From Macrostomum lignano (Eukaryota), in contig NIVC01001520.1 in the NCBI GenBank assembly GCA_002269645.1, positions 1-64,000 of the forward strand: a stretch of DNA of 64,000 bases. Reading direction: 5' to 3'. Within the stretch, counting starts at the first letter, position 1, and every line of letters begins with the position of its first letter. The position numbers and the translations under genes are program-made. Shown here piece after piece: positions 1 through 59,000 of the stretch. The notes under the pieces were generated by a model. That model saw nothing but the letters and a program-made list of their open reading frames with translations. It was not told the origin of the DNA and searched no databases.

Positions 1-1292
1 TTGAATGGTTGTAACATTACTACGACAGGAGAGCGTTCTGCTACATAGAACAGTGCCTTGAGCATTTTCTAAGAGACACGTCTGTATCGAAGAAATTGCT
101 TCTTATCTATGACGTTGGTAAGTGCATCTTTTGCATACTATGTCCGTATAATTTAGCGGGATCAAAATAAAGTACATACATTTTTCTCACATCTCACTGC
201 AGGCTGCCGCGTTTCAGCTCGCGTACAATCCGCAGTTACTAATCTGGTGCTAACGTACAGGCCTCTTCATGTGCCATCAATGCATTCCACGCACCTTGGC
301 CACAAACCAAGCTGCCAAAGAAGGTTCTCTGTGCGTGTCACTCCTGGAGCGGGCTTGTGTGATGGCGAGAAACACAGAGAGAGCTTGGGCACAACTTCGC
401 CATATGGGCATTCACTAAAGTACATGCGACCTGATCGTAGGAGCACCTGTATGTCTCAAATTCTGTTTCATTTCAATGCGAATCAATTGTTTAACACACG
501 CCCAGTGGTTCCAGCAACGTCTCAGACTTTTGGACAGTACGATAAAAAACATGTCTTCGGAAATGAACTCACTTCTTGATGATGCACGAATACAGCAAGC
601 TTCCGGAATTTTAGACGGAAGCTTAGTACTTTCGGAGTTCAAATTCGGAATCTCGGCCGTCAGTGGCATCAGAACTCTCTTATAGGCGCAGTAGAAAACT
701 CTGAAAACGACCTTCTATCTAATATTCGTTCGCTTGCAGTTCTCAGAGAACATTGGCTGCGACAGTCTGGACTAAATATGGGCCAAGGTCATAACAGAGC
801 TTGCTTGCGCCGTGTACAAGGTTTGACTTCAGAAATGAAAGCTGATATTAATCGTCTGCCGGAAGAGACCCGGGTTCTTTTGATCAGTATCGGAAGCCAA
901 ATAGTTCAAAGTACGATGGTTTATCTGAATCAGCTACTTCTGTCCGTTTCCGTCGGCGTGCAATCGATCTCTATCATAAGTACGACAGAGTGAATGAGGA
1001 ACTGCATATCGTATCTGAGGAATGGTATGACTTTATTGTAAAAATGGACATGGTTTGCAAGAGTCTAGATAATCAGGCTGGTTTGGCGGCTCAGTTTCGA
1101 AAACTATTTCGATCAATTTTAGAAAGAGTTGTAAATCTTGACGTTCCAGCAAGGGCAGAATATTTTCGACTCATTTTGGGCGGCGCAGAACAAAGCATTG
1201 AAAATGTTCCTCCTATTAGCAACGACTCGCCAACTGAGTCGGCGACTGAGTCTTCAGCGTCTGAATCGGATGATTCAGAAGATACTTTTTGA
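1..1292 (+). mobile_element. KDZ (Kyakuja-Dileera-Zisupton) transposase, C-terminal part; interrupted by about eight 1-nt frameshifts and an intron at 118-202; the 5' part lies outside the window
   Basis: Joining frames gives LNGCNITTTGER(F)CYIEQCLEHF...LLLIYDVGC, then CAINAFHA(L)GHKPSCQRRFSVRVTPGAGLCDGE, then TERAWAQLRH, GHSLKYMRPDRR, and later RAIDLYHKYDRVNEELHIVSEEW. This order (GE-x2-Y; YDxGC; FH-x2-H-x3-CQ; GxGxxDGE-x2-ER-x-W) matches the KDZ transposase core. Intron GTAAGT(118)...CTGCAG(202) keeps the YDV|GC frame. Confidence 0.8.
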
Positions 1293-1816
1293 GCAAGTTT
1301 AAATTTTTTAGTTAGCTGAACACTTCAATTACACAGTGATTTATTGTGTCGGCTGTTTCCAAAGCACTTGCAATAAAATTATTCAAAAATTGCTGTGCCA
1401 ATAGATGTCATTTTTAACCTCACTTGCACACAATAGCTCAAGTGTGCTGTGAATTCGCTGCTCAGCTGTATCATTCCTGGGTCCATGTGCTCTGCTTACA
1501 CGTAGCGGACCTGTTAACGTTAATTAATTCAGTTTAATGCAGTGATGAACTGTCACTCAGTTTATAAACTGGCGCTAAATTGTTTTGATTAACGGAGCCA
1601 AAGAGCACTTATTTATTTCGTTACCTTTTATACTACACTTCATTGCATGAAAATTAAACTGCCGTTAAGTTGACATTTTCGCCCGTTATGGTGTTATTAA
1701 ACGATATGTTGGTTGCTTTTTCTCATTTTTAAGTCGTCAATATTAGTTAGGACTCAGTTTTCGATCCCGATTGCCATTCTCAAATCCATAGAATCGACTC
1801 AAGACCCTAGCTGTAG
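1246..1816 (+). repeat. Direct repeat copy 1 (last ~47 nt of the transposase CDS, AATAAA at 1372-1377, and spacer)
   Basis: 1246-1798 reads identical to 3078-3630 (offset 1832); similarity continues to about 1816/3662. Confidence 0.95.
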
Positions 1817-2013
1817 TCCTAAGTTTTTAGTATCACAAAGATTTAGTACTCAATCAATCTGTCTTTCATGTCGACATGTGTCCACCTTTTTACAGATTTC
1901 TTATTGAAATCCGAAAGTGATTGTGTTATCTGAAACGAGTCGGCAAAAATCAATTAATTTACTCTTTTTGTGGTAATAATCTATCAATCTTTGGCTACGA
2001 TCACAAATCTACC

Positions 2014-3012
2014 ATGACGACTGAAAAGTACGAGTGCCCTCTGTGTCTTCCTGGTTTAAGTACCTATAGTGCTCGAGCTGATCGACTTCTTTTGCATGCA
2101 ACTAAAAAGCATGCTTTAGACGCTAAAAGAGCAAGTTGCATAATTCAATATCTTCGTTGGTCCAGAAAGTCAGATGTAAAATTATGCGCGCTATGTGATC
2201 AGTTTGCTGTAAATTTGCGAGATCACTACGCTAAATGTCATGCGGGCGATTACAGGCGTCTTAACTCCTTATTAACTGGACAACCAGCTATCAGGTTGGC
2301 GAGAAAACGTGCTCTGCGGCGATTCGGAGAACTGTACTGGTGTTTTATTGCCGACCAGCCTTTGCCACGGTATCCGGATTCAAGTTACGAGAACGAAAAA
2401 CAGGGATTGCACGAGAGGTGAGTAATGTTATTGCCTATCCTGCTTTTCAAGATTTGATCAGACATGTAAACGGTTGTATAAACCTAAAAATATCTTTGTA
2501 TATCCTCCCACAGAGAACAAGAGTCGCGGGCTGGTAAACAGTCTTGTCTCCGAATCTATACAAAAGCCTCAAAACTTCTTCCGGCAAAAGTTACAGTTCA
2601 GTTAGCGGGTGAGAAGGGTTATGGACTGTTTTCTGATGAGAATATCAAGGCGAAGTCATTCGTCTGTTTCTATGGTGGAGCAGTTTTATCCAAAAAAGAA
2701 GGGGCGGCTAGGGAAGAAAAGCGATCTCGCGAAGGAGATTCGCCCGCATTCGCCTTTTTCTATTTTTATGGTTCAAAATCATTATGCGAAGACGCTACCC
2801 TCACTGATTCTGTAGGTCGCTATATTAATCATAGTCGACTGAACCCAAACTTGGTTCCTAGTGTCATATCACCTTGCAAAGACATTGGACGCCACACAAG
2901 CCGAATAGGATTTTTTGCATTACATAATATTCCCAAGGGAATTGAGTTGCTTTATGATTATGGTGAACGAGATGAAGAGTGTTTGCAAAAGTTTCCGTGG
3001 CTAAACTCTTAA
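2014..3012 (+). CDS. C2H2-like zinc-finger + SET-domain lysine methyltransferase, PR-Set7/SETD8-like; exons 2014-2417 and 2514-3012; 300 aa
   Basis: Exon 1: MTTEKYECPLCLPG...HATKKH and CALCDQFAVNLRDHYAKCH. Phase-2 intron GTGAGT(2418)...CCACAG(2513) joins in frame. Exon 2: GEKGYGLF...FVCFYGG...CEDAT...VGRYINHSRLNPN...ELLYDYGERDEECLQKFPWLNS*. The NHS, ELLYDYG and terminal PWL motifs are SET8-family hallmarks. The ORF track missed exon 2 because it has no early start codon. Confidence 0.88.
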
Positions 3013-3077: not shown

Positions 3078-3662
3078 CTGAGTCTTCAGCGTCTGAATCG
3101 GATGATTCAGAAGATACTTTTTGAGCAAGTTTAAATTTTTTAGTTAGCTGAACACTTCAATTACACAGTGATTTATTGTGTCGGCTGTTTCCAAAGCACT
3201 TGCAATAAAATTATTCAAAAATTGCTGTGCCAATAGATGTCATTTTTAACCTCACTTGCACACAATAGCTCAAGTGTGCTGTGAATTCGCTGCTCAGCTG
3301 TATCATTCCTGGGTCCATGTGCTCTGCTTACACGTAGCGGACCTGTTAACGTTAATTAATTCAGTTTAATGCAGTGATGAACTGTCACTCAGTTTATAAA
3401 CTGGCGCTAAATTGTTTTGATTAACGGAGCCAAAGAGCACTTATTTATTTCGTTACCTTTTATACTACACTTCATTGCATGAAAATTAAACTGCCGTTAA
3501 GTTGACATTTTCGCCCGTTATGGTGTTATTAAACGATATGTTGGTTGCTTTTTCTCATTTTTAAGTCGTCAATATTAGTTAGGACTCAGTTTTCGATCCC
3601 GATTGCCATTCTCAAATCCATAGAATCGACACCTTAGAATCGACTTAAGACCCTAGCTGTAG
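3078..3662 (+). repeat. Direct repeat copy 2
   Basis: Starts 66 nt after the SET stop codon. Identical to 1246-1798, then a short TAGAATCGAC duplication. Confidence 0.95.
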
Positions 3663-4017
3663 GCCTAAACTTTGCGCTATCTATAAGAAGTCAGCATCGA
3701 ATACTTGATCAGTCTTGATGTCATACTTGATACGGACCCCTCAGCCAGGAGTGCTGTTATCTTTTCTCCAGGCCATTCAGTCATACTAATCTCTTTTTGT
3801 ATAATGGTACCCTATGGTTATTTAGTTATACTTACTAATATTATACAGTGCAACCCTGTCCCCATAATTCAATCAGCTTTAACTAGATGTAACTTTTGCT
3901 ACTGACTTTCTTCAGTTACTAAAAAAACAATGCTATACTTATTTCAGCTAGCCACTCGACGCATTGAAATTAAGTCTTCTAAAACACCAATCCAATTATT
4001 CAACAACTGTTTTAGCC

Positions 4018-4836
4018 ATGCCTAATAAACACGCAAAAATCTGTTGCTTTTTGTGCTCATGGACTGGTAGAACGTACCAATTGTGGCGACATCGGGAAAA
4101 GTTTCACCCTACCACAACTGATGAGCAGATTCAGGCCATGATTGATCTGTCTAAAGCCAATTCGAAGGCCAAGTCTGTGGCTCTCTGCCCTCTCTGCCAG
4201 GATATGATTTCTTGCCCTAGAATGCACTTTCGAAACAACCATGCTTCCGAATTTCAAACTCCAAGTCGTAGAAAAGACCTGGCAGGTCGGGCTGCTACTA
4301 AGCGAATGAGAAAACAAGCTTCCGTACGTCTGGCAGAGCTTCGCGACTTGGCAGTTGTAAAAGAAGTGCCCATCCACTATGCTCCATTCGATCAAGTAGT
4401 CCTGGACATTCAACATCTGGTTTATAATTACGAAATAAGCGAGACAGACAACGTTGCTCCACTCCGTGCAGCTTCACAACCTGTTGCAGCCTCAACTTCT
4501 ACTGCGGCATCTAGTCCTAAGCAATCTGATCGGCATTGCACATTTTCTGGGTGCAACTGTGGTGCACCAAGACTGCCTTGTGCTACATCAACAAAAGAAA
4601 TTGCCAATTGTATTCCTAGATGCTCACTAGGAAATTTAAAAAAATCTCCAGGAAAAAAATTCCCCGCTGCAATCGGCCCAGTTCCTATTCCTCTCAAGCC
4701 TAAAGCAATTGTTCCTCTCACAATAGTTCCACAACCCGTTATTCGCAGACGGAAATCGTCACATGAAGTTAAAGTAACTAAATTTGATCCAAACCTGGTG
4801 TCCTCTTCCCCAAAAAGCAATCGATTTGCTGATTAG
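4018..4836 (+). CDS. Double C2H2-like zinc-finger protein with a low-complexity Pro/Lys-rich tail (272 aa from ATG 4018)
   Basis: Open frame. CFLCSWTGRTYQLWRHREKFH and CPLCQDMISCPRMHFRNNH have the same two-finger layout as the N-terminus of the SET gene, followed by a basic helix. Confidence 0.65.
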   Translation: MPNKHAKICCFLCSWTGRTYQLWRHREKFHPTTTDEQIQAMIDLSKANSKAKSVALCPLCQDMISCPRMHFRNNHASEFQTPSRRKDLAGRAATKRMRKQASVRLAELRDLAVVKEVPIHYAPFDQVVLDIQHLVYNYEISETDNVAPLRAASQPVAASTSTAASSPKQSDRHCTFSGCNCGAPRLPCATSTKEIANCIPRCSLGNLKKSPGKKFPAAIGPVPIPLKPKAIVPLTIVPQPVIRRRKSSHEVKVTKFDPNLVSSSPKSNRFAD

Positions 4837-4978
4837 ACCTTTTAATAGTCCTTGAACCCCGACCCCTTCTCCTACTCACTGTAATGGCAATCTCTGAGCG
4901 AGCAGAAATACAAAATTAATTTAACAGTTTATTCTCAAGCACTTGCAATCATTAAAATTATCGTATAAAGTGGTAATT

Positions 4979-5228
4979 AAAAATTGCTGTGCCAATAGAT
5001 GTCATTTTTAACCTCACTTGCACACAATAGCTCAAGTGTGCTGTGAATTCGCTGCTCAGCTGTATCATTCCTGGGTCCATGTGCTCTGCTTACACGTAGC
5101 GGACCTGTTAACGTTAATTAATTCAGTTTAATGCAGTGATGAACTGTCACTCAGTTTATAAACTGGCGCTAAACTGTTTTGATTAATGGAGCCAAAGAGC
5201 ACTTATTTATTTCGTTACCTTTTATACT
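4979..5228 (+). repeat. Direct repeat copy 3 (partial)
   Basis: Matches 1385-1634 with about two substitutions (AAACTG/AAATTG; TTAATGG/TTAACGG). Confidence 0.9.
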
Positions 5229-5589
5229 TTTGTTATTGATTATTTTTCAATCAGGTGTACTTCCATTTAGATCACTGTTTGTTGACAGTTTATCGTTCCA
5301 TTTTCTACTAAATACACGTTGTTATAATTAAGTTATAGTTTACTTTAACGACTTCATTGTGTATTGCATTTGTTTTCTTCTTTTACACACTTATTGCAAT
5401 GTTAACATTTGACAATGACTTATGATTTTACTTAGATTCGCCCGTCTAGATTTGCTCTTTTACAATTGCCCATCCAGAATCACCCTTTTTATCACACCCT
5501 CCTCCAGGTCATTCAGTCATGCTACTTTCACTGTGTATCTCTATTTTATGTCCTATCTACTCTTCTTTGTTGTATGACTCAATCATTAG

Positions 5590-5892
5590 TAATGTCCATC
5601 GCCGCGAAGCTGTTCAACCGGCTCCTGCTTACCCCGTTGCAGCCCGTGCTGGATCCCTACCTGCGGACCGAGCAGAACGGGTTCCGGCCAAGACGCGGCA
5701 CTGTTACGCAGATCCTGGCCCTTCGGTGAGTCATCGAGCAGGCGCGCACTCGGCGGTATCCGGACTGCCTGCTGGCCGATGCTGGCGCCCCCGACCAGGC
5801 CGGTGGACCGGCCTTTCTCCGCTCCCGTGCTCTGGGGCGCGACCTGTGATGCCCAACCTCGACCCTGGGGCGTAACTTGTTGTTGTTGTCAG
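5590..5892 (+). mobile_element. Non-LTR retrotransposon (RTE-like) reverse transcriptase remnant
   Basis: SIAAKLFNRLLL...DPYLRTEQNGFRPRRGTVTQILALR*VIEQA is the conserved LINE RT segment (Q-x-GFR). It has an in-frame stop and ends near a (TTG)n tract at about 5877-5890. Confidence 0.75.
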
Positions 5893-6722: not shown

Positions 6723-6976
6723 ACAACACGGATTCTGATAGTAATGTACGTGTAGGAATTTCGTCGTGTACATTTACATGTAGTAGAAATCTTGGCTTTG
6801 TCACCCACCATAAAATCCATGGCGACGAGCCTGAGTGCATAACTACAACACCGAGTTGCTTTAAATATGCATTTACGCGGCTATCATGTGCCAGCAGGGG
6901 CGCATCCAGAGGCTACAGGATGTTGCATGGGGCTCAGTAAAAATCGAGTTTCTTTTCTTAATTGTTGTAAAAGCAG

Positions 6977-9477
6977 AGAGCAGAGAAGTAGAAAGATCAA
7001 GGGATCTTTGAGTTGTGGGGTAAGTTTTGGAGATATATGGCACATGGCACCTTTTTCGAGATGCAAGATAGACTGCATGGTCTGGTCAGCTATCAATTTA
7101 TAAGGCATGAGAGTGGAACTGATGTGCAGGTATACCCAGCTTTTGCTAATGTTTTGCCAATTTCTTAATCTCAAGCTCAAATTCTTATTCCTGATTCCTC
7201 ACGTTGGGGTAAATATGAGATCAGAGTGCAGGCGAGGGGATAGAAAAGAATACATATAACATATCAGATACATCAAGTACATATTGAAAGATGAGAGAGA
7301 GATCGAGAGAAGATGACACGAGAGAAGAGTGCGTGCTATATAGTAAAGGAGAAATGAGAATTGAGAGCAGAGAAGTAGAAAGATCAAGAGATCTTTGAGT
7401 TATGGGGTAAGTTTTGGAGATATGTGGCACATGGCACCTTTTTCGAGATGCAAGATAGACTGCATGGTCTGGTCAGCTATCAATTTATAAGGCATGAGAG
7501 TGGAACTGATGTGCAGGTATACCCAGCTTTTGCTAATGTTTTGCCAATTTCTTAATCTCAAGCTCAAATTCTTATTCCTGATTCCTCACGTTGGGGTAAA
7601 TATGAGATCAGAGTGCAGGCGAGGGGATAGAAAAGAATACATATAACATATCAGATACATCAAGTACATATTGAAAGATGAGAGAGAGATCGAGAGAAGA
7701 TGACACGAGAGAAGAGTGCGTGCTATATAGTAAAGGAGAAATGAGAATTGAGAGCAGAGAAGTAGAAAGATCAAGAGATCTTTGAGTTATGGGGTAAGTT
7801 TTGGAGATATATGGCACATGGCACCTTTTTCGAGATGCAAGATAGACTGCATGGTCTGGTCAGCTATCAATTTATAAGGCATGAGAGTGGAACTGATGTG
7901 CAGGTATACCCAGCTTTTGCTAATGTTTTGCCAATTTCTTAATCTCAAGCTCAAATTCTTATTCCTGATTCCTCACGTTGGGGTAAATATGAGATCAGAG
8001 TGCAGGCGAGGAATAGAAAAGAATACATATAACATATCAGATACATCAAGTACATATTGAAAGATGAGAGAGAGATCGAGAGAAGATGACACGAGAGAAG
8101 AGTGCGTGCTATATAGTAAAGGAGAAATGAGAATTGAGAGCAGAGAAGTAGAAAGATCAAGAGATCTTTGAGTTATGGGGTAAGTTTTGGAGATATGTGG
8201 CACATGGCACCTTTTTCGAGATGCAAGATAGACTGCATGGTCTGGTCAGCTATCAATTTATAAGGCATGAGAGTGGAACTGATGTGCAGGTATACCCAGC
8301 TTTTGCTAATGTTTTGCCAATTTCTTAATCTCAAGCTCAAATTCTTATTCCTGATTCCTCACGTTGGGGTAAATATGAGATCAGAGTGCAGGCGAGGGGA
8401 TAGAAAAGAATACATATAACATATCAGATACATCAAGTACATATTGAAAGATGAGAGAGAGATCGAGAGAAGATGACACGAGAGAAGAGTGCGTGCTATA
8501 TAGTAAAGGAGAAATGAGAATTGAGAGCAGAGAAGTAGAAAGATCAAGAGATCTTTGAGTTATGGGGTAAGTTTTGGAGATATATGGCACATGGCACCTT
8601 TTTCGAGATGCAAGATAGACTGCATGGTCTGGTCAGCTATCAATTTATAAGGCATGAGAGTGGAACTGATGTGCAGGTATACCCAGCTTTTGCTAATGTT
8701 TTGCCAATTTCTTAATCTCAAGCTCAAATTCTTATTCCTGATTCCTCACGTTGGGGTAAATATGAGATCAGAGTGCAGGCGAGGGGATAGAAAAGAATAC
8801 ATATAACATATCAGATACATCAAGTACATATTGAAAGATGAGAGAGAGATCGAGAGAAGATGACACGAGAGAAGAGTGCGTGCTATATAGTAAAGGAGAA
8901 ATGAGAATTGAGAGCAGAGAAGTAGAAAGATCAAGAGATCTTTGAGTTGTGGGGTAAGTTTTGGAGATATATGGCACATGGCACCTTTTTCGAGATGCAA
9001 GATAGACTGCATGGTCTGGTCAGCTATCAATTTATAAGGCATGAGAGTGGAACTGATGTGCAGGTATACCCAGCTTTTGCTAATGTTTTGCCAATTTCTT
9101 AATCTCAAGCTCAAATTCTTATTCCTGATTCCTCACGTTGGGGTAAATATGAGATCAGAGTGCAGGCGAGGGGATAGAAAAGAATACATATAACATATCA
9201 GATACATCAAGTACATATTGAAAGATGAGAGAGAGATCGAGAGAAGATGACACGAGAGAAGAGTGCGTGCTATATAGTAAAGGAGAAATGAGAATTGAGA
9301 GCAGAGAAGTAGAAAGATCAAGAGATCTTTGAGTTATGGGGTAAGTTTTGGAGATATATGGCACATGGCACCTTTTTCGAGATGCAAGATAGACTGCATG
9401 GTCTGGTCAGCTATCAATTTATAAGGCATGAGAGTGGAACTGATGTGCAGGTATACCCAGCTTTTGCTAATGTTTTG
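6977..9477. repeat. 387-bp tandem repeat, about 6.5 near-identical copies
   Basis: AGAGCAGAGAAGTAGAAAGATCAAG recurs every 386-387 nt; the ORF track repeats the same peptides at this period. Confidence 0.97.
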
Positions 9478-11764: not shown

Positions 11765-30263
<18,499 letters not shown>

Positions 30264-30354: not shown

Positions 30355-33300
30355 AAATTATGAGAATGATGATCAGAATGATGGGAATGAGGATCAGGAT
30401 GAAGATGGGAATGAGGATCAGGATGAAGGTGGGAATGAGGATCAGGATGAAGATGGGAATGAGGATCATGATGAGGATGGGAATGAGGATCATGATGAGG
30501 ATGGGAGTGAGGATCATGATGATGATGGGAATGAGGATCAGGATGAGGATGAGGATGGGAGTGAGGATCAGGATGAAGATGGGAATGAGGATCGGGATGA
30601 GGATGGGGATGAGAATTAGGATGAACATGGGAATGAGGATCAGGATGAAGAAGGGAATGAGGATCATGATGAGGATGGGAGTGAGGATCATGATGATGAT
30701 GGGAATGAGGATCATGATGAGGATGAGGATGGGAGTGAGGATCCAGGATGAAGATGGGAATGAGGATCGGGATGAGGATGGGGATGAGAATTAGGATGAA
30801 CATGGGAATGAGGATCAGGATGAAGATGGGAATGAGGATCAGGATGAAGATGGGAATGAGGATCAGGATGAAGATGGGAATGAGGATCAGGATGAAGAAG
30901 GGAATGAGGATCATGATGAGGATGGGAGTGAGGATCATGATGATGATGGGAATGAGGATCAGGATGAGGATGAGGATGGGAGTGAGGATCCAGGATGAAG
31001 ATGGGAATGAGGATCGGGATGAGGATGGGGATGAGAATCAGGATGAAGATGGGAATGAGGATCATGATGAGGATGGGAGTGAGGATCAGGAAGAGGATGA
31101 ACATGGGAATGAGGATCAGGATGAAGATGGGAATGAGGATCAGGATGAAGATGGGAATGAGGATCAGGATGAAGATGGGAATGAGGATTAGGATGAGGAT
31201 GGGAATGAGGATCAGGATCAGGATGAGGATGGGAGTGAGGATCCAGGATGAAGATGGGAATGAGGATCGGGATGAGGATGGGGATGAGAATCAGGATGAA
31301 CATGGGAATGGGGGTCAGGATGAAGATGGGAATGAGGATCAGGATGAGGATGGGAATAAGGATTATGATTCAGATATAGAATTTTAGGATTGGGAGATAG
31401 ATGTGAGAATGAGGATCAGGATGTTGATTGGGATGAGGGTCAGGATGATGATGGGCATGAGGATCAGGATGAAGATGGGAATGAGGATCAGGATGAAGAT
31501 GGGAATGAGGATCATGATGAGGATGGGAGTGAGGATCATGATGATGATGGGAATGAGGATCAGGATGAGGATGAGGATGGGAGTGAGGATCCAGGATGAA
31601 GATGGGAATGAGGATCGGGATGAGGATGGGGATGAGAATTAGGATGAACATGGGAATGAGGATCATGATGAGGATGGGAGTGAGGATCAGGATGAGGATG
31701 AACATGGGAGTGAGGATCATGATGAGGATGGGAATGAGGATCAGGATGAAGATGGGAATGAGGATCATGATGAGGATGGGAGTGAGGATCATGATGATGA
31801 TGGGAATGAGGATCAGGATGAGGATGAGGATGGGAGTGAGGATCCAGGATGAAGATGGGAATGAGGATCGGGATGAGGATGGGGATGAGAATTAGGATGA
31901 ACATGGGAATGAGGATCAGGATGAAGATGGGAATGAGGATCAGGATGAAGATGGGAATGAGGATCAGGATGAAGATGGGAATGAGGATCAGGATGAAGAA
32001 GGGAATGAGGATCATGATGAGGATGGGAGTGAGGATCATGATGATGATGGGAATGAGGATCAGGATGAGGATGAGGATGGGAGTGAGGATCCAGGATGAA
32101 GATGGGAATGAGGATCGGGATGAGGATGGGGATGAGAATCAGGATGAAGATGGGAATGAGGATCATGATGAGGATGGGAGTGAGGATCAGGATGAGGATG
32201 AACATGGGAATGAGGATCAGGATGAAGATGGGAATGAGGATCAGGATGAAGATGGGAATGAGGATCAGGATGAAGATGGGAATGAGGATTAGGATGAGGA
32301 TGGGAATGAGGATCAGGATCAGGATGAGGATGGGAGTGAGGATCCAGGATGAAGATGGGAATGAGGATCGGGATGAGGATGGGGATGAGAATCAGGATGA
32401 ACATGGGAATGGGGGTCAGGATGAAGATGGGAATGAGGATCAGGATGAGGATGGGAATAAGGATTATGATTCAGATATAGAATTTTAGGATTGGGAGATA
32501 GATGTGAGAATGAGGATCAGGATGTTGATTGGGATGAGGGTCAGGATGATGATGGGCATGAGGATCAGGATGAAGATGGGAATGAGGATCAGGATGAAGA
32601 TGGGAATGAGGATCATGATGAGGATGGGAGTGAGGATCATGATGATGATGGGAATGAGGATCAGGATGAGGATGAGGATGGGAGTGAGGATCCAGGATGA
32701 AGATGGGAATGAGGATCGGGATGAGGATGGGGATGAGAATTAGGATGAACATGGGAATGAGGATCACGATGAAGATGGGAATGAGGATCATGATGAGGAT
32801 GGGAGTGAGGATCATGATGATGATGGGAATGAGGATCAGGATGAGGATGAGGATGGGAGTGAGGATCCAGGATGAAGATGGGAATGAGGATCGGGATGAG
32901 GATGGGGATGAGAATCAGGATGAAGATGGGAATGAGGATCATGATGAGGATGGGAGTGAGGATCAGGATGAGGATGAACATGGGAATGAGGATCAGGATG
33001 AAGATGGAATGAGGATCAGGATGAAGATGGGAATGAGGATCAGGATGAAGATGGGAATGAGGATTAGGATGAGGATGGGAATGAGGATCAGGATCAGGAT
33101 GAGGATGGGAGTGAGGATCCAGGATGAAGATGGGAATGAGGATCGGGATGAGGATGGGGATGAGAATCAGGATGAACATGGGAATGGGGGTCAGGATGAA
33201 GATGGGAATGAGGATCAGGATGAGGATGGGAATAAGGATTATGATTCAGATATAGAATTTTAGGATTGGGAGAAAGATGTGAGAATGAGGATCAGGATGT

Positions 33301-33720
33301 TGATTAGGATGAGGGTCAGGATGATGATGGGCATGAGGATCAGGATGAAGATGGGAATGAGGATCAGGATGAAGATGGGAATGAGGATCAGGATGAAGAT
33401 GGGAATGAGGATCAGGATGATGCTGAGAGTAAGGATTATCGTTCAGATATATAATTTTAGGATTGGGAGAAAGATGTGAGAATGAGGATCATGATGTTGA
33501 TGGGGATGAGGATCAAGATAATGATGGGGATGAGGATCAAGATAATGATGGGCATGAGGATCAGGATGAAGATGGGAATGAGGATCAGGATGATGCTGAG
33601 AATAAGGATCCGGACGATGGGAATGAAGATCAGGATGATGATGAGAATAAGGATTATGGTTCAGATATATAATTTTAGGATTGGGAGAAAGATGTGAGAA
33701 TGAGGATCAGAATATAGATG
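30355..33720. repeat. GATGAG/GGGAATGAGGATCAG-rich satellite with a 1101-bp higher-order duplication
   Basis: Identical ORF peptides recur at +1101 (30748/31849, 30959/32060, 31370/32471). The punctuation motif CAGATATAGAATTTTAGGATTGGGAG recurs about five times. Confidence 0.95.
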
Positions 33721-34186
33721 GAAATGCTTCTATGTAGTTTTTAATGAAGATAAATTTTATGTGCAAGCTGAGTGATGAAGTGAAGCAATACCGCATGCCA
33801 TGTTATGCATGGCTATTGAAGTACGTGTTTGCACTTTGTAATTGCAATATCAAAGAAATATGATAGTCTGCGCTTCGTTGCGCAAAGATGGGCCAATTAG
33901 TGAACACTTTCTAATTGCTGGTCATATCCACTTTGATGCTGCTTGCTTGATAACTTATTGCTCCGTTAATTAGCGCATGCTGCTCTGCTGATCAAAGTAT
34001 TGCTGTTTTGTAAATGCTAATATTACTAGTATACAGCAGCACAGCTCCATATGTGAACTGTCGCACTCGAGCTTACCAAGTGCGGCGCCATGCTTGAAGC
34101 AAAAAGCCTGCATGGATTTTTCTTTCACTTTCTTATTGACTTGTGAAACAAAGGGCGATTCGAAGCTTGCTTAGGTCAGAGCGTTA

Positions 34187-34905
34187 GATGGGATGGGATG
34201 GGATGGGATGGGATGGGATGAGATGGGATGGGATGGGATGGGATGGGATGGGATGAGATGGGAGGGAATGGGATGAGAGGAGATGGGATGGGATGGGATG
34301 GGATGGGATAGGATGGAATGGAATGGAATGGAATGGAATGGGATGGAATGAGATGGATGCGATGGGATGGAATGGGAGGGAATGGGATGAGAGGAGATGG
34401 GATGAGATGGGATGGGATGGGATGGGATGCGATGGGATGCGATGGGATGGGATGGGATGGGATGAGATGGGAGGGAATGGGATGAGAGGAGATGGGATGG
34501 GATGGGACGGGATGGGATGGGATGGAATGGAATGGAATGGAATGGAATGGGATGGAATGAGATGGATGCGATGGGATGGAATGGGAGGGAATGGGATGAG
34601 AGGAGATGGGATGAGATGGGATGGGATGGGATGGGATGCGATGGGATGCGATGGGATGGGATGGAATGGGAGGGAATGGGATGAGAGGAGATGGGATGAG
34701 ATGGGATGGGATGGGATGGGAGGGGATAGGATGAGATGGGATGGGATGGGAAAGGATGGGATGAAATGGGATGAGATGGGATGGGAGGGAATGGGATGAG
34801 ATGGGATGGGATGAGATGGAATGTTATATGGAATTGGATGAAAGGATGGGATGGGATGGGATATGATATGATTGGGTGAGATGGGATGAGATGGAATGGG
34901 ATGGG
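34187..34905. repeat. (GGGAT)n/(GGAAT)n pentanucleotide satellite
   Basis: Direct reading. Confidence 0.95.
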
Positions 34906-35225
34906 AGAATTCACAGATAATACTTGAGTTTGTCGGTATTTAGTAATTATAGCTCGTAGATTAAAAAGTACATTGGAATTCAGCGTTTTAGTTAGTTGCC
35001 TTTGTTCGAAGCAATATTGAGTCCACGTGCCCGTTGGCTTAATACAAATAAGCCTAGCAGGGTAACAATTTATGAAACTACAAAAATAAACGGCAAAAAT
35101 ACTTTTTAATAAATCAGAAACATACATTTAATTGTATGTTAAGTGAAGATTTGGCACAATCGCTAACTCGTAGAAATGTATTTCTGCATTTTGGTACTAC
35201 ACAGCATTTTGCAATATTTCTCAGG

Positions 35226-53000: not shown

Positions 53001-56000
53001 TCCCTCACCCAGTCTCCCTCACCCAGTCTCCCTTACCCAGTCTCCCTTACCCAGTCTCCCTCACCCAGTCTCCCTCACCCAGTCTCCCTCACCCAGTCTC
53101 CCTCACCCAGTCTCCCTCACCCAGTCTCCCTCACCCAGTCTCCCTCACCCAGTCTCCCTCACCCAGTCTCCCTCACCCAGTCTCCCTCACTCAGTCTCCC
53201 TCACCCAGTCTCCCTCACCCAGTCTCCCTCACTCAGTCTCCCTCACCCAGTCTCCCTCACCCAGTCTCCCTCACCCAGTCTCCCTCACCCAGTCTCCCTC
53301 ACCCAGTCTCCCTCACTCAGTCTCCCTCACCCAGTCTCCCTCACCCAGTCTCCCTCACCCAGTCTCCCTTACCCAGTCTCCCTCACCCAGTCTCCCTCAC
53401 CCAGTCTCCCTCACCCAGTCTCCCTCACCCAGTCTCCCTCACTCAGTCTCCCTCACCCAGTCTCCCTCACCCAGTCTCCCTCACTCAGTCTCCCTCACCC
53501 AGTCTCCCTCACCCAGTCTCCCTCACCCAGTCTCCCTCACCCAGTCTCCCTCACCCAGTCTCCCTCACCCAGTCTCCCTCACCCAGTCTCCCTCACTCAG
53601 TCTCCCTCACCCAGTCTCCCTCACCCAGTCTCCCTTACCCAGTCTCCCTCACCCAGTCTCCCTCACTCAGTGTCCCTCACCTAATCTCCCTCAGCCGCGT
53701 GAATGTGCTGACAGTGAATGTTGGCCACTTGGCTAGTGACGCTAGAACTGGAACTCTCACCTGCCCCTTCTCTCACCCCCAAATGAGCAGGAAAAGCCGG
53801 GTACCACATTTCTAGTTGGCTTTCTATTCGGCATATTCTCAATGCAATCGCTGTCAGTAACGCTCGCCATTGTGTACCTCGGTCCCGGGATCGAGCCTTG
53901 GCAGCCAGGCCTGCGGCTATTCCGAGCGTCACTATTAGTGCCGCTGTTCATCTGCCTGCTAGGCGTGAACACCTACGGTTGGCGCGGGGCCGGGGTTAAT
54001 CACGTGCTAATATTTGAAATCGATCCCAGGCACCATCTAAATCATATGGAGATTCTCAAAGCTGGCGGTATATTGGCTGTGACCTGGTGCGCCGCACTGC
54101 AGCTGTTTGTGTTCTCCGGCTGGCTGACCGGCATGCCGCCCTTCGCCGCGCCCTTTCTCTACTGGGCATTTATGCCCATTTATCTGTTGAATCCGCTGCC
54201 AGTCTGTCAGCACAAGTCCAGGCGGTGGCTCTGCCGGATTCTGGTAAATTATATTTTTTATATAGCGGTGCGCGATCATTTGGGACAGGGTATGGCAGGG
54301 AGAAGCGAAAAGGGAGGGCAGATGAGGGAGGAATAGAGAGGGCGAATCTATGTGCTGAGAGGAAGTAAGCGAAAATGAGGAATAGCGGAGAAAATGGAGA
54401 GTGAGTGGAAAAAGTGAATAGGAGGGGCGGAATGGAGGGGGCGTTAACGTAGAGGGAGGAGCGGAGCGGAGATAAGCGGAGAGAGCAGAGAAGAGCGGAA
54501 AGGAGCGGAGAGAAGCGGAGAGAGCAGAGAAAAGCGGAAAGGAGCGGAGAGAAGCGGAGAGAGCAGAGAAGAGCGGAGAGGAGCGGAGAAGAGCGGAAAG
54601 GAGCGGAAAGGAGCGGAGAGAAGCGGAGAGAGCAGAGAAAAGCGGAAAGGAGCGGAGAGAAGCGGAGAGAGCAGAGAAGAGCGGAGAGGAGCGGAGAAGA
54701 GCGGAAAGGAGCGGAGAGGAGCGGAAAGGAGCGGAGAGGAACGGAAGAGGAGCGGAGAGGAGCGGAGAGAGGAACGGAAGAGGAGCGGAGAGGAGCGGAG
54801 AGGAGCGGAGAAGAGCGGAGAGGAGCGGAGATAAGCGGAGAGGAACGGAAGAGGAGCGGAGAGGAGCGAAGAGGAGCGGAGAGGAGCGGAGAGGAACGGA
54901 GAGGAACGGAAGAGGAGCGGAGAGGAGCGGAGAGGAACGGAAGAGGAGCGGAGAGGAGCGGAGAGGAGCGGAGAGGAGCGGAGAAGAGCGGAGAGGAGCG
55001 GAGAGGAACGGAAGAGGAGCGGAGAGGAGCGGAGAGGAACGGAAGAGGAGCGGAGAAGAGCGGAGAGGAGCGAAGAGGAACGGAGAGGAGCGAAGAGGAA
55101 CGGAGAGGAGCGGAGAGGAGCGGAGAGGAACGGAGAGGAAAGGGCGGAGAAAAATCAAAGAGAATATCGCATCTAATATCTACGCTCGTATGCAGAGAGA
55201 AAATGCTCTCTTCATAGCTCCACAGAGTGGTATAAAATTTCTAAATAAAAAACCTTTAAGCCTTTCCAGCCCGCACTGTTCGCTTTCTCGCTAGACGCTA
55301 CTGCACACTTGATTGATAAGTGGAATGCCAAATTAGTTCAATAAATCGAAGCCTCACTTCCTGCCCAGTACTCTGCGTCAAGAAAATTGAAGTACTATTG
55401 GAGAGCGTACGTATGAAGACAAGCAAAGATATTGTAGTTTCATAAGCTGCCTAGTTGAATGCTTGGCCATCACTTCAATGTAAAGGACTCTGTTGGAGAG
55501 AACGGAAGTGTTAGGTACTTTTACTTTCCGCTTCTTTGAAGCGGCAAACAGCTTATCATAAAGTCACGAACTTAATGTACTCGGAACTGCGTCATTGTCC
55601 ACGCGATTTGTTAAACCATTTCCAGACGCTACAGTTAAACCCCTACTGCGCAATGAGAATAATCAATCTAGTCTAATAATCCCAAACTAAAGTCTAAGAA
55701 TCCCAATCAGAAATCTACGAATCCCAATCAGAAATCTAAGAATCTCAACCTGAAATCTAAGGATCCCAATCAGAAATCTAAGAATCCCAACCTGAAATCT
55801 AAGAATCCCAATCAGAAATCTAAGAATCCCAATCAGAAATCTAAGAATCTCAATCAGAAATCTAAGAATCCGAATCAGAAATCTAAGAATCTGTGGTGTA
55901 TCGCACACTGAGATGCACTATAGTTTATATAAGTTCAAGTTCGTTATTCTATGCCGTTTGTTTGCACTAATCGCCTCTAAGCATTCTATCGCTACAGTTT

Positions 56001-59000
56001 CTTCTATGGTAATTAACCCAGCCCAAAGTTCCTAGAGCTCACCCTTCTGATCTCTTTCAAATAAGAAATATAAAGAATCTTAAGCTCATGAGTTAAATAC
56101 TTCAGCCGGAGTTCAATTCACAACAATGGCGTCGCAGCTCGGCGAACTGCCGCTGGATAAACCTGACCGAGCACAGGTTTGGCTGACTGCCTTTCAAGCG
56201 CTGGCCAGAGCAAAAGGCTGGTCTGATTCAACCGAAAAAAAACGATCGCTGACAACTTTCTCGCTATCTGTGGACTCACCGCGCTTGAAAAGCTGCAGAG
56301 TCTGGTGTCGCCACGCCCACTCACGGAGCTCTCATTCGAGGATATTCAGACGACATTTGTCACGTATCTGCGCCCCAAAGAGAAACTGATAATCGCTGAG
56401 CGCGCGCGATTCTTCAAGACGCAACAACTGCAAGGAGAAAGCATTTCTGATTTCGTCAGTCGTCTCCGCCAGGCGGCCACTGACTGCAAGTTCGACGACC
56501 TCAAGGCATGCAGAAGCCCTTCCGAGGAGCTAATCAGTACGGCACTCATCGCAGGACTGCGCGATAGCCGGGAGCAGCAGCGCGTACTCGAAGCAATGCA
56601 GCTGAAACTGATGTCCGTCTCAGAAATCACGGACTTCATACGCAACCTAGAGCAAGTCGATGGCTTCGTCGCCAGGCAGATGGACAAGGCAACCGGCCAA
56701 TCTAAAACACCATGCACCTACGAAGCCACCCTTCATTACGCTCAATCCGGTCGGCCTGAGACATCGCAGCATGCAAGCTCTCGTCGCACAATCAGCGCCT
56801 GTCGGTACTGTGGCAAGTCACACCCTGAAGGCAGATGCCCGGCTTTCGGAAAAAGCTGCTCCAAGTGTGGAAAGAAAAACCACTTCAGTACTGTTTGTAA
56901 GTCTCGATCCATGCACTACACGACTACTTGTGAGGAGGATTCAGATTCCGCCCAACAAAAAACAGACGTACTGCATCTCATCGATGCGCTCAATTCGATT
57001 GAAGTATCTATGGAGACTGTGCCCATCAACGATAAGCCCTTCAAAATGCAGATCGACACGGGAGCATCGGTCTCCGTGCTCTCCAGTGCGCAGTGGGCTC
57101 TACTGGGTAAGCCACCACTCATGCGTTCCAATCGGCGCTTGGAGGCCTTCGACGGGCACGTCATGAAATCGCTTGGCAAAGTGACTGCAACTGTGGAGCT
57201 ACGAGGACGCCTTCAACCAGTGGAACTGATTGTAGTCTCTTCGGAAAAGACGTACGGGTTGCTTGGCCGCGACCTCCTCGAGTCTGACGGTGTCTTCCAT
57301 GCCAGCGATGTTCAAGCAGAAAAAACTGCCATCGAACCTCTGCCCTGTATCCGAGGCGTTAAGGCCCGAATGGAACTGGTGGACGGTGCTAAACCACAAT
57401 TTTGCCGCGCTCGTGCTGTGCCACTCGCCCTAGAAAGCCAAATCAGCGCAGAACTGGATCGCCTCCACCAGCTTGGTGTCATCGAGCCAACAGAGGGTCC
57501 GGTTAGTAACGCTTCACCCGTAGTGTGGGTAAAGAAGAAGGATGGAACTCTCCGCATGTGCGCGGACTACAGCGTGCACGTCAATTCGAAGATCAAATCA
57601 GACTCATATCCCATTCCACACATCGAGACCATGTTCTCCAAGCTAAAGAACGCCAAAACTTTCGCCACAGTCGATCTACGTTCGGCGTACTGGCAGATCG
57701 AGCTTGATGAAGCCGCGAGAGACCTATCGGTAATAAACACGTCCCGCGGGCTCTATCGTGTCAACCGGCTGCAAATGGGGATGAAGAACGCCTCCTTCAT
57801 CTTCCAACGCACCATGGAATCCATTCTAGGAGACATCAAAGGACTGCTTATCTACCAAGACGACATTCTCATTCACGCGCCAGACAAACCCACGCTGGAG
57901 AAGCGCCTCGCTGCTGTGCGAACGCGTCTATCTGAGAAGCGCGTGACTATCAACGAAGCGAAAAGCATCAGCTATTGCGATTCGGTTTCGTTCTTGGGCT
58001 TCCGAATATCCGCGGCTGGTATTCAGCCCGATGATCGCCTAGTGGAGAAAATTCGCCATGTGTGCCCGCCAGCAAATAAACCAGAGCTCGCTCACTTTCT
58101 TGGCTTGGTAAACTTCTTCGGCCGCCTCATCCCAAACTTTGCAGGCAAAACTGCACCGCTTAATAGACTACGACAAGCAAGCGTTCCGTTCGTGTGGTCG
58201 GAGGAGTGTTCCAAAGCGTTCGAGAGCCTAAAGCTGGAAATCGCTTCAGCGCCTGTGGTCCAGCCCTACAGCTTGACAAAGGAACTGACGCTGACCACTG
58301 ATGCTTCCAAAGGAGCCCTCGCCGCCGTGGCAACACAAGATGGCCATCCCGTGATATACGTGTCACGTAGCCTGTCCTCCGCTGAATCCAATTATTCTAA
58401 CATCGAGCGGGAGGCCTTGGCTATTGTTTGGGCCATCGCACGCTTGAAGCACTACTTCCATGGCCGACCATTCACAATACGCACAGACCATCAACCGCTC
58501 ATCCGACTTTTTGGCTCCGGATCCGGCGTCCCAGTGGATGCCTCAGCCCGAATCGGACGCTGGGCCTTGTACCTGATGCAGTTTGATTACCGAATTCAGT
58601 ATGCACGTGGCAGTAGCATTCCACACGTAGATGCCTTATCCAGACTCAGATTCGATGACAGCTCATCAGACGACAAGGCCACATTCGAGACGATTAATTC
58701 AATCGCATTTGAATCACCTGTGATCGACGCTAAACGAATCACAGCGGAGATGGAGTTAGACGCGCTCACCCAGAGAATTCTCAATCGCGTCCGCCAAGGC
58801 GATTGGCGAAACTGCAGCCAGGCAGAAGCGCAGTTCAAAAAAGTCTCAAAAAAACTAACGCTAGAAAATGGACTACTCTACATGCAAAGAAGAGTCTTCA
58901 TTCCACCAAGACTGCGCAAGGCCGCGTTCGATGCCATTCACGACACGCACACGGGCATGCATGCAGCGCACAGTCTAATGTCTACCAGCTGCTGGTGGCC

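What the first reader, a model, noticed from the sequence alone, without database searches (positions are those of the whole stretch)
2014..3012. Zinc-finger-fused SET8-like enzyme with catalytic residues intact
Seen: FYGG, RYINHS, ELLYDYG and FPWL are all present and the frame is clean. Established: canonical SETD8 has a disordered N-terminus with PIP motifs rather than zinc fingers, and the first Tyr of LLYDY is the switch that restricts it to monomethylation; that Tyr is kept here. Inference: a monomethyltransferase that two C2H2-like fingers may target to DNA or protein. The single intron lies between the finger region and the SET region, consistent with exon shuffling.
Basis: partly seen in the sequence, partly recalled or inferred. 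Interest (0 to 1): 0.72.

Follow-up and report, generated by a model that had tools for sequence, protein, structure and literature searches.

The report
Transposase-linked zinc-finger SET8-like methyltransferase gene
The flatworm gene is a real, transcribed SET8-type protein methyltransferase with two zinc fingers, and it is one of three linked genes led by a KDZ-type transposase, so it looks like a chromatin enzyme carried by, or inherited from, a jumping gene.

Summary
Window 2014-2417 + 2514-3012 (GT..AG intron of 96 nt) encodes a 300-aa protein with all four motifs. It is 100% identical to a transcript-derived GenBank model of Macrostomum lignano. The C-terminal half is a SET domain (Pfam 7.6e-16). 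Its best sequence and fold matches are human SET8/KMT5A, and Y188, Y282 and Y284 align with Y245, Y334 and Y336. The N-terminus holds two C2H2-type fingers whose eight ligands are invariant in five relatives.

The gene is the middle one of three co-oriented genes: a KDZ (Kyakuja-Dileera-Zisupton) transposase, the finger-SET gene, and a finger-only gene with the same two-finger module. A second M. lignano locus is so diverged that synonymous sites are saturated (35-50% protein identity). It keeps all three genes, a near-identical repeat after the KDZ and SET stops, and an upstream array of the same 20-bp unit.

I read the gene as an accessory chromatin-modifying gene of a KDZ transposon-type module, analogous to TET/JBP genes in fungal KDZ elements. 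Mobility is not shown. No terminal repeats were found, and the "copies" are substitution-free duplicated blocks, so dN/dS across copies cannot be computed. Enzyme activity, substrate and finger target remain inferred.

The parts
1..1294 (+). 3' part of the KDZ transposase gene. It is cut by the contig start; the full gene of 808 aa is seen in the sister copy L001 at 6767-8102 + 8188-9278.
   Evidence: L001 position 7985 corresponds to window position 1, at 99.8% identity. The gene model carries PF18758 KDZ. The spliced protein was rebuilt and equals P0166. The window copy carries 8 one-base indels relative to L001 and L002, all within the first 900 bases of the contig.
1246..1822 (+). Copy 1 of a 553-590 bp direct-repeat cassette. 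It starts in the last 47 nt of the KDZ CDS and carries an AATAAA at 1372.
   Evidence: Self-BLAST shows 97% identity to 3078-3668.
2014..2417 (+). Exon 1 of the finger-SET gene: aa 1-135, with two C2H2-type fingers (C8/C11/H28/H33 and C58/C61/H71/H76) and a basic stretch ARKRALRR.
2418..2513 (+). Intron of 96 nt, GT..AG, phase 2.
   Evidence: The spliced product is identical to the transcript-derived GenBank model.
2514..3012 (+). Exon 2: linker plus the SET8/KMT5A-like SET domain (aa 160-300) with Y188, N240-H241-S242, Y282, Y284 and F295-P-W-L; stop at 3010-3012.
3078..3668 (+). Copy 2 of the direct-repeat cassette. It begins 66 nt after the SET stop, includes a relic of the KDZ acidic C-terminal coding tail, and has an AATAAA at 3204.
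4018..4836 (+). Finger-only ORF of 272 aa from the first ATG (the ORF opens at 3964). It has the same two-finger module as the SET gene and is not annotated in GenBank.
   Evidence: Pairwise BLASTP to the SET N-terminus gives E 9e-6. All eight ligands are invariant in the 5-sequence alignment. A homologous ORF lies in the second locus at L004 9071-9385, tblastn E 8e-9. No Pfam hit.
4840..5228 (+). Copy 3 of the cassette, degenerate at its start (64% identity) and 99% identical over 4979-5228.

Best explanation
The gene encodes a catalytically competent SET8/KMT5A-type lysine methyltransferase. The kept switch tyrosine predicts a monomethylase. Its usual regulatory N-terminus is replaced by a two-finger C2H2 module.

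It is not a stand-alone host SETD8 variant. It is the accessory gene of a KDZ (Kyakuja-Dileera-Zisupton) transposon-type module made of three co-oriented genes: KDZ transposase, finger-SET, and a finger-only protein that shares the same finger module. Each gene or gene pair is followed by a near-identical 3' cassette. An array of a 20-bp unit (GGCGCCAATTTGAGCTTTCC) lies about 2.7 kb upstream.

Proposed mechanism (inferred): the three genes are transcribed from one unit. The shared fingers bring the SET enzyme and the finger-only protein to the same DNA, with the 20-bp array or the cassette as candidate targets. The enzyme then monomethylates a histone tail, most likely H4K20-like, or an element protein. 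In that way the element sets its own chromatin state or guides transposition, as proposed for TET/JBP genes carried by fungal KDZ elements.

Shown: gene structure, domain identities, the conserved three-gene linkage at two diverged loci, and transcript-based models.
Inferred: activity, substrate, DNA target, co-transcription and present-day mobility.
For: - Enzyme: Pfam SET scores 7.6e-16. The best PDB sequence hits are SETD8/KMT5A, aligned to the very C-terminus. The AF2 SET part has pLDDT above 90, and the 19 best Foldseek hits are all human SET8, with target-normalised TM 0.67-0.87. G170, Y188, G190, H241, E279 and Y284 are invariant in 51 relatives. The nearest relatives are named SETD8 or H4K20 methyltransferase by their sources.
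- Fingers: eight ligands are invariant in 5 sequences. The finger profile hits CTCF, ADR1, ZBTB7A and Zif268 fingers, best E 1e-8. The paralogue has sub-threshold C2H2 Pfam hits.
- Linkage: a KDZ gene (PF18758, 1.6e-31) lies directly upstream on the same strand in L001 and L002. The second locus, L004, has KDZ (47% identity), finger-only and finger-SET (35-41% identity).
- Constraint between loci: pS is 0.76-0.83 (saturated) against pN 0.34-0.45 for all three genes.
- Shared architecture: both loci have an internal direct repeat after the KDZ and SET stops. Both have an upstream array of the same 20-bp unit, ending 2.7-2.8 kb before the KDZ ATG. That unit is absent from the 64-kb window, although the window holds more than 20 other satellites.
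- Transcription: the GenBank models are RNA-seq derived. KDZ and SET share a transcriptional-unit prefix at both loci (Mlig001681 g7/g4 and Mlig022522 g1/g3). A UniProt model even merges KDZ and SET.
- Precedent: fungal KDZ elements carry TET/JBP genes; Harbinger, MuDR and proto-Helentron elements of Phytophthora carry SET genes.
Against: - No terminal inverted repeats or target-site duplications were found.
- The four places encoding the identical protein are collinear duplicated blocks, satellites included, with no substitution in 7 kb. They are explained by the known redundancy of the DV1 assembly and not by transposition. Only two independent loci are known, so the family is low-copy and may be immobile or domesticated.
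- The locus passed the annotators' repeat filter.
- No KDZ or finger module lies next to SET8-like genes in 80 metagenome loci, in P0003's contig, or in six long SET8-like proteins.
- The finger fold could not be modelled with confidence.
- The three finger-SET proteins do not group together in a crude tree of the SET domain.
- Activity, substrate and DNA binding are untested.
Confidence: 0.6

Rival explanations
1. Domesticated module: the KDZ gene, the finger-SET gene and the finger-only gene are an old, immobile host locus, duplicated once long ago and again by the recent chromosome duplication. It now serves a host function, for example heterochromatin or satellite regulation. The SET enzyme is a host chromatin writer targeted by its fingers.
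For: Only two diverged loci are known, each kept intact with pN far below the saturated pS. The copies are collinear duplicated blocks without substitutions. No TIRs were found. The genes passed the repeat filter of the GenBank annotation. The locus lies in a satellite-rich region.
Against: Intact transposase ORFs of 808 and 830 aa with a full-length KDZ domain are equally what active low-copy elements show. Kyakuja elements are reported to lack TIRs (PMC12730594), so their absence is uninformative. The conserved upstream 20-bp arrays and the internal cassettes look like element cis-sequences.
Confidence: 0.3
2. Ordinary host SETD8 paralogue that lies beside a transposase by accident, with no functional tie to it.
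For: The SET domain is a typical KMT5A-type domain. SET8-like genes elsewhere sit in ordinary host contexts.
Against: The same neighbourhood (KDZ upstream, same strand, plus a finger-only paralogue) recurs at a locus whose synonymous sites are saturated. Both loci share the cassette and satellite architecture and the transcriptional-unit names.
Confidence: 0.07
3. Inactive relic: the reading frame is open only because the duplication is young, and the protein has no function.
For: The copies are too similar to test selection. The KDZ part of the window copy carries frameshifting one-base indels.
Against: The catalytic motifs and all eight zinc ligands are kept between loci with saturated synonymous divergence, and in a third relative, P0006. 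The gene model is transcript-derived. The indels are confined to the first 900 bases of the contig and are absent from L001 and L002, so they are probably assembly errors.
Confidence: 0.03

Closest known systems
Human SET8 / SETD8 / KMT5A (PR-Set7), the H4K20 monomethyltransferase
   Same: The SET fold, including the C-terminal flanking helix ending in PWL, and no post-SET cysteine cluster. Y245, Y334 and Y336 correspond to Y188, Y282 and Y284. The NHS motif and the ELLYDYG[DE]R motif are present.
   Different: Only about 23-28% identity in the structural alignment. The N-terminus is a two-finger C2H2 module, not a disordered region with PIP degrons. F295 stands where the wild-type human chain has His. 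The gene is linked to a transposase.
Fungal KDZ (Kyakuja/Dileera/Zisupton) transposons that carry TET/JBP dioxygenase genes (Iyer et al. 2014; PMC12730594)
   Same: A KDZ transposase gene is accompanied by a separate gene for an enzyme that edits an epigenetic mark, and the pairing is kept across diverged lineages.
   Different: The passenger is a histone-type lysine methyltransferase, not a DNA-base dioxygenase. The host is an animal (a flatworm). A third, finger-only gene is present. Copy number is low and the ends are undefined.
SET-encoding DNA transposons of Phytophthora: HarbingerS and MuDR (Kojima and Jurka, Repbase Reports 2014, cited in PMC12730594) and proto-Helentron (PMC4067079)
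   Same: A SET-domain methyltransferase is encoded inside a DNA transposon as an extra ORF.
   Different: Those belong to other transposon superfamilies and live in oomycetes. The proto-Helentron SET resembles Clr4 (H3K9 type), not SET8. No C2H2 module is reported there.
SETMAR (Metnase), primate SET-mariner fusion
   Same: A SET methyltransferase is combined with a transposon-derived, sequence-specific DNA-binding function.
   Different: SETMAR is a host SET gene fused to a domesticated mariner transposase in one polypeptide. Here the SET enzyme and the transposase are separate genes, and the targeting module is a C2H2 pair.
PRDM proteins (PR/SET domain plus C2H2 fingers)
   Same: A SET-related domain and C2H2 fingers occur in one protein.
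   Different: PRDM fingers are C-terminal arrays and the PR domain is a separate SET branch. Here the PRDM2_PR hit is below threshold, and only in the paralogue (19.8 bits against a cut-off of 27), while SET8 is the clear best match.

Membership tests
SET8/KMT5A-type SET methyltransferases | SET domain detected above the curated threshold | tested here: met
   PF00856 scores 58.9 bits against a cut-off of 22.4, E 7.6e-16, over aa 170-285.
SET8/KMT5A-type SET methyltransferases | Closest solved relatives by sequence and by fold are SET8, with the alignment running to the C-terminal PWL helix | tested here: met
   phmmer top 12 hits are SETD8/KMT5A, query 162-299. Foldseek top 19 hits are all SET8, target-normalised TM 0.67-0.87, mostly 0.83-0.87. 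The margin over EZH2 and MLL by sequence is modest (4e-13 against 4e-11).
SET8/KMT5A-type SET methyltransferases | Catalytic and cofactor residues: GxG, Tyr245, NHS, Tyr336 | tested here: met
   G170-x-G172, Y188, N240-H241-S242 and Y284 are present. They are invariant or nearly invariant in 51 relatives.
SET8/KMT5A-type SET methyltransferases | Phe/Tyr switch residue is Tyr (Y334), the monomethylase state | tested here: met
   Y282 aligns with residue 334 of the 352-aa isoform, from the ungapped C-terminal alignment. The Y334F structures hold dimethyl-lysine. The relative P0006 has Phe at this position.
SET8/KMT5A-type SET methyltransferases | N-terminal PIP-box degron coupling the enzyme to PCNA/CRL4-Cdt2 | tested here: not met
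   No Q-x-x-[ILMV]-x-x-[aromatic]2 motif, nor a looser form of it, occurs in the 300 aa.
SET8/KMT5A-type SET methyltransferases | Monomethylation of histone H4 Lys20 | not testable with these tools
   Needs an enzyme assay with mass spectrometry.
KDZ (Kyakuja-Dileera-Zisupton) DNA transposons | KDZ transposase domain in an intact ORF within the unit | tested here: met
   PF18758 at 1.6e-31 (808 aa, L001) and 4e-34 (830 aa, L004), covering nearly the whole profile. The window holds only the 3' part.
KDZ (Kyakuja-Dileera-Zisupton) DNA transposons | Defined termini (TIRs or CA..TG ends) with 7-8 bp target-site duplications | tested here: inconclusive
   No convincing inverted repeats in L001 4000-15000. 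The boundaries cannot be set because all copies are collinear far beyond the genes. Kyakuja elements are reported to lack TIRs.
KDZ (Kyakuja-Dileera-Zisupton) DNA transposons | Multiple insertions at unrelated sites (mobility) | tested here: inconclusive
   Four contigs carry the identical protein, but the three read are one duplicated block with 0 substitutions in 7 kb. One further diverged locus is known. No whole-genome census was possible with these tools.
KDZ (Kyakuja-Dileera-Zisupton) DNA transposons | Catalytic acidic residues of the transposase intact | not tested
   Only the full-length Pfam domain match was checked.
Classical C2H2 zinc fingers | Cys-x2-Cys ... His-x3-5-His ligand pattern conserved among relatives | tested here: met
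   C8, C11, H28, H33 and C58, C61, H71, H76 are invariant in 5 sequences. Finger 1 of the window protein has a 4-residue insertion (16-residue spacer, against 12 in P0005 and P0006). Finger 2 has a 9-residue spacer.
Classical C2H2 zinc fingers | Match to C2H2 profiles or to solved fingers | tested here: inconclusive
   The family profile hits CTCF (1e-8 summed; single fingers about 0.2), ADR1, ZBTB7A, Zif268 and the GAGA factor. Pfam C2H2 models stay below their cut-offs: P0005 zf-H2C2_5 scores 24.4 against 27, and the window protein shows only zf-Di19 at E 0.049.
Classical C2H2 zinc fingers | Beta-beta-alpha fold | tested here: inconclusive
   AF2 places helices over both His pairs (19-33 and 60-75), but pLDDT is 36-69 there, and mean pLDDT is 61 for the module modelled alone.

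The most novel reading that the evidence does not exclude
An animal KDZ transposon that carries its own histone-type lysine monomethyltransferase. A C2H2 module aims the enzyme, and a second element-encoded protein shares that module. Both recognise the element's own 20-bp repeat array, so the element writes a chromatin mark on itself, or on its target sites, to control its silencing or transposition. This would be the first such case in Metazoa and the histone counterpart of the fungal KDZ-TET/JBP partnership.
Probability: 0.3. Interest if true: 0.75.

Novelty: new variant of a known kind. Interest (0 to 1): 0.55.

Why it matters
Transposons that encode enzymes editing epigenetic marks are rare. 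They bear directly on how mobile DNA escapes or exploits host silencing. The KDZ superfamily is known for carrying TET/JBP DNA-base dioxygenases in fungi. SET genes inside transposons have been noted only in oomycete Harbinger, MuDR and proto-Helentron elements.

A KDZ-linked, finger-targeted SET8-type methyltransferase in a flatworm would extend this theme to animals and to a histone H4K20-type writer. Transgenesis and RNA-seq resources are described for Macrostomum lignano (PMC5730564), and RNAi is available by my own knowledge. The case also comes with concrete candidate cis-targets: the 20-bp array and the 3' cassette.

If the module is instead domesticated, it is a new example of a transposase co-opted together with its accessory chromatin genes. 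For genome annotation, it shows that "hypothetical protein" BOX15_Mlig001681g4 is a SET8-like enzyme and that an unannotated finger-only gene lies next to it.

Tried and rejected
1. Profile search of the 5.8-billion-protein database with the finger-module alignment A1: nothing at E <= 0.01.
2. Word-indexed searches with the full protein and with the KDZ protein: only M. lignano proteins and one ENA protein were returned.
3. dN/dS across the near-identical copies: impossible, because there are 0 substitutions in about 7 kb. Between the two loci, synonymous sites are saturated, so only pN < pS can be stated.
4. Search for terminal inverted repeats around the three genes: only short, weak pairs.
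5. Looking for the same linkage elsewhere:
   - P0003's contig is an ordinary host context.
   - Six long SET8-like proteins have no KDZ domain.
   - 80 metagenome loci with SET8-like genes have no match to the finger region, the KDZ protein or the finger-only protein.
6. A neighbour-joining tree of the SET domains is star-like. It does not group the three finger-SET proteins, so it is uninformative about a single origin.
7. AF2 of the finger module: low confidence. I did not run a fold search on that model.
8. The organism of SRR19430222 (P0006, L005) could not be identified. Only simple-repeat matches to the M. lignano loci were found.
9. Iyer et al. 2014 (PNAS) is not held in the library. 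Whether it mentions SET genes with KDZ elements could not be checked.
10. No paper mentions Mlig001681 or Mlig022522. The M. lignano transposon paper read does not mention KDZ.
11. The bacterial-type promoter/terminator scan is not meaningful for this eukaryote.

Full report
**1. What is in the sequence**

The window is the first 64 kb of contig NIVC01001520.1 of the Macrostomum lignano assembly GCA_002269645.1.
- An ATG at 2014 opens a frame that runs to 2417.
- A 96-nt GT..AG intron (2418-2513) has a stop codon immediately if left unspliced.
- The frame resumes at 2514 and ends with TAA at 3010-3012.
- The spliced CDS is 903 nt and encodes 300 aa. It contains FYGG (aa 187), RYINHS (237), ELLYDYG (279) and FPWL (295).
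- The protein is 100% identical over its whole length to GenBank BOX15_Mlig001681g4, a "hypothetical protein".
- The GenBank models of this assembly are derived from an RNA-seq transcript assembly (PMC5730564).
- There is only one such gene in the window.

**2. The enzyme half**

- Pfam finds a SET domain at aa 170-285 (E 7.6e-16).
- Against the PDB, the twelve best sequence matches are all human SETD8/KMT5A. The alignment covers query 162-299 and runs to the last residues of the chain.
- An AlphaFold2 model built on 51 relatives has pLDDT above 90 over nearly all of the SET part. Its 19 best Foldseek matches in the PDB are all SET8, with target-normalised TM 0.67-0.87.
- The alignment to the 352-aa isoform (219-351 against 162-299) is ungapped in the relevant blocks. 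Y188, Y282 and Y284 therefore correspond to Y245, Y334 and Y336.
- PDB entries 3F9W-3F9Z document Y245F and Y334F as the product-specificity mutants. Dimethyl-lysine is seen in Y334F.
- G170, Y188, G190, H241, E279 and Y284 are invariant in the 51 relatives.
- The nearest relatives that carry names are called SETD8 or [histone H4]-lysine(20) N-methyltransferase. They come from choanoflagellates, ichthyosporeans and a trematode.
- There is no PIP-box-like motif.

The "SET8-like, catalytic residues intact, switch Tyr kept" part of the finding stands. Activity and substrate remain predictions.

**3. The finger half**

The exhaustive representative search gave 1,906 hits. Only two relatives share the N-terminus:
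- P0005, another M. lignano protein of 409 aa, BOX15_Mlig022522g3;
- P0006, 349 aa, from an unidentified sequencing run.

These two, the window protein, and two finger-only ORFs described below were aligned. C8, C11, H28, H33, C58, C61, H71 and H76 are invariant in all five.

A profile of this alignment hits classical DNA-binding C2H2 fingers in the PDB: CTCF (summed E 1e-8), ADR1, ZBTB7A, ZFY, Zif268, and the GAGA factor for finger 2. Pfam C2H2 models stay just under their thresholds. AlphaFold2 puts helices over both His pairs, but at low confidence.

I accept "two C2H2-type fingers" on the ligand pattern and the profile matches. The fold itself is not verified.

**4.

In the sister copies of the locus (L001, L002), an 808-aa gene with a full-length KDZ transposase domain ends about 720 bp upstream of the SET gene, on the same strand (PF18758, E 1.6e-31). 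The window begins inside that gene: L001 position 7985 is window position 1.

Downstream, at 4018-4836, lies an unannotated ORF of 272 aa. Its N-terminus has the same two-finger module (pairwise E 9e-6).

The unit is therefore KDZ transposase, then finger-SET, then finger-only, all on the + strand.

**5. A second, old copy of the whole unit**

P0005 lies on another contig (L004, NIVC01000910.1). There an 830-aa KDZ gene (47% identical) is followed by a finger-only ORF (35% identical over 91 aa, E 8e-9). Then comes the finger-SET gene (35-41% identical). These are the same three genes, with the last two in swapped order.

Between the two loci, synonymous differences are saturated (pS 0.76-0.83). 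Nonsynonymous differences are 0.34-0.45 for all three genes alike. The three genes have thus diverged together and under constraint.

Two non-coding features are also shared in kind:
- **A repeated 3' cassette.** In each locus a near-identical direct repeat follows the KDZ stop and the SET stop. In the window these are 1246-1822 and 3078-3668 (97%), plus a partial third copy after the finger-only gene. In L004 they are 8092-8386 and 12070-12364 (99.7%). The window cassettes carry an AATAAA on the + strand at 1372 and 3204.
- **An upstream satellite.** Both loci are preceded by an array of the same 20-bp unit, GGCGCCAATTTGAGCTTTCC, in higher-order repeats of 138, 158 and 296 bp. The array has the same orientation in both and ends 2.7-2.8 kb before the KDZ ATG. 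It is 79% identical between loci, although the spacers show no similarity. The unit does not occur in the 64-kb window, which holds more than twenty other satellites.

**6. Transcription**

In the naming scheme of the annotation, transcriptional units clustered at 95% identity share a prefix, and genes cut out of them get g-numbers. About 7% of the units are precursors that encode several proteins.

KDZ and finger-SET share the prefix at both loci: Mlig001681 g7/g4 and Mlig022522 g1/g3. A UniProt model of the older assembly merges KDZ and SET into one 1,347-aa protein.

This suggests co-transcription, but it is an inference from names, not from reads.

**7. Is it mobile?**

This is not shown.
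- The identical protein is encoded on four contigs. The three I could read are collinear over 9.5-18 kb, flanking satellites included. They differ by no substitution in the 7-kb gene region.
- The DV1 assembly is known to hold 180 Mb of duplicated blocks because of extra chromosomes. These are therefore copies of one locus.
- No terminal inverted repeats were found. Kyakuja elements are reported to lack them (PMC12730594).
- Only two independent loci are known to me.

The unit may be a low-copy active element or a domesticated module. I give these readings about 0.6 and 0.3.

**8. Comparison with what is known**

- KDZ transposons of fungi carry TET/JBP dioxygenase genes.
- SET genes have been recorded in HarbingerS and MuDR elements (Repbase Reports, cited in PMC12730594) and in a proto-Helentron of Phytophthora (PMC4067079).
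- SETMAR fuses a host SET gene to a mariner transposase.

I found no paper that combines KDZ with a SET gene and none that mentions these M. lignano genes. SET8-like genes sampled elsewhere show no KDZ or finger neighbour.

The finding is therefore a new variant of a known kind: a transposon-linked epigenetic enzyme.
- As an enzyme, it passes every sequence and fold test for the SET8 branch except the PIP-box N-terminus.
- As a KDZ element, it passes the transposase test, while the tests for ends and mobility are inconclusive.

**9. Verdict**

The most likely function is a finger-targeted lysine monomethyltransferase acting for, or descended from, a KDZ transposon. The shared finger module and the 20-bp array are testable leads for its target.

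Interest is moderate to good (0.55). The case is not categorically new, but it is unreported in the papers I could search and can be tested in a laboratory model animal.

Noticed in passing
window 1-900: The KDZ coding part of the window copy differs from the sister copies L001 and L002 only by eight one-base indels that break the frame. All lie at the very start of the contig, so they are probably assembly or polishing errors and not real decay.
   Followed up: partly
L001 1-4085; L002 45-4085; L004 594-2314: An array of a 20-bp unit GGCGCCAATTTGAGCTTTCC (higher-order periods 138, 158 and 296) lies 2.7-2.8 kb upstream of the KDZ gene at both diverged loci. It is 79% identical between them, although synonymous sites of the genes are saturated. 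It is a candidate cis-element of the unit.
   Followed up: partly
window 1246-1822, 3078-3668, 4840-5228; L004 8092-8386, 12070-12364: Each locus has its own near-identical direct repeat placed after the KDZ stop and after the SET stop. The window version begins inside the KDZ acidic C-terminal coding tail. Its origin (duplication or gene conversion) and its role (shared 3' end, or an element terminus) are unexplained.
   Followed up: partly
window 6976-9477: A 387-bp satellite of 6.5 copies at 99% identity. The sister copies show more units, and some in inverted orientation (L001 14959-18005 and 19369-20999).
   Followed up: no
window 56305-59898: An intact 1,197-aa ORF with aspartyl protease, reverse transcriptase, RNase H and integrase domains (Ty3/gypsy-type pol). 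It lies between two stretches of one 21-bp satellite (55672-55891 and 60233-63833), as if inserted into that array.
   Followed up: partly
window 30380-34906: Several kilobases of G-rich repeats, (GATGGG)n in 24-bp units and (GATGG)n, give a GC skew of 0.65-0.71. Most of the window beyond 6 kb is a mosaic of more than 20 different tandem repeats.
   Followed up: no
window 5466-5729: A short ORF ending in ...NGFRPRRGTVTQILALR looks like a reverse-transcriptase fragment of a non-LTR element, but it has no Pfam hit.
   Followed up: partly
L004 10721-11015 and 11113-11418: The linker of the paralogue P0005 contains an internal tandem duplication of about 300 bp (84% identity). It repeats a Pro/Ala-rich segment between the fingers and the SET domain.
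   Followed up: no
P0168 (UniProt A0A1I8J3S..., M. lignano): A gene model from the older assembly merges the KDZ transposase, the finger-SET gene and downstream exons into one 1,347-aa protein. It is either a prediction artefact or a trace of a read-through transcript.
   Followed up: no
P0004 (Holothuria leucospilota KAJ8048607.1): The second-best hit in the representative search is a 799-aa sea-cucumber model made of about eight tandem C-terminal halves of a SET8-like domain. It looks like a tandem array of gene fragments.
   Followed up: no
P0006 / L005 (Logan SRR19430222): A third finger-SET relative has Phe at the switch position (ELLFDYG) and no intron. Its organism is unknown. A tRNA-like stretch and an (ATAGA)n repeat lie upstream of it.
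   Followed up: partly
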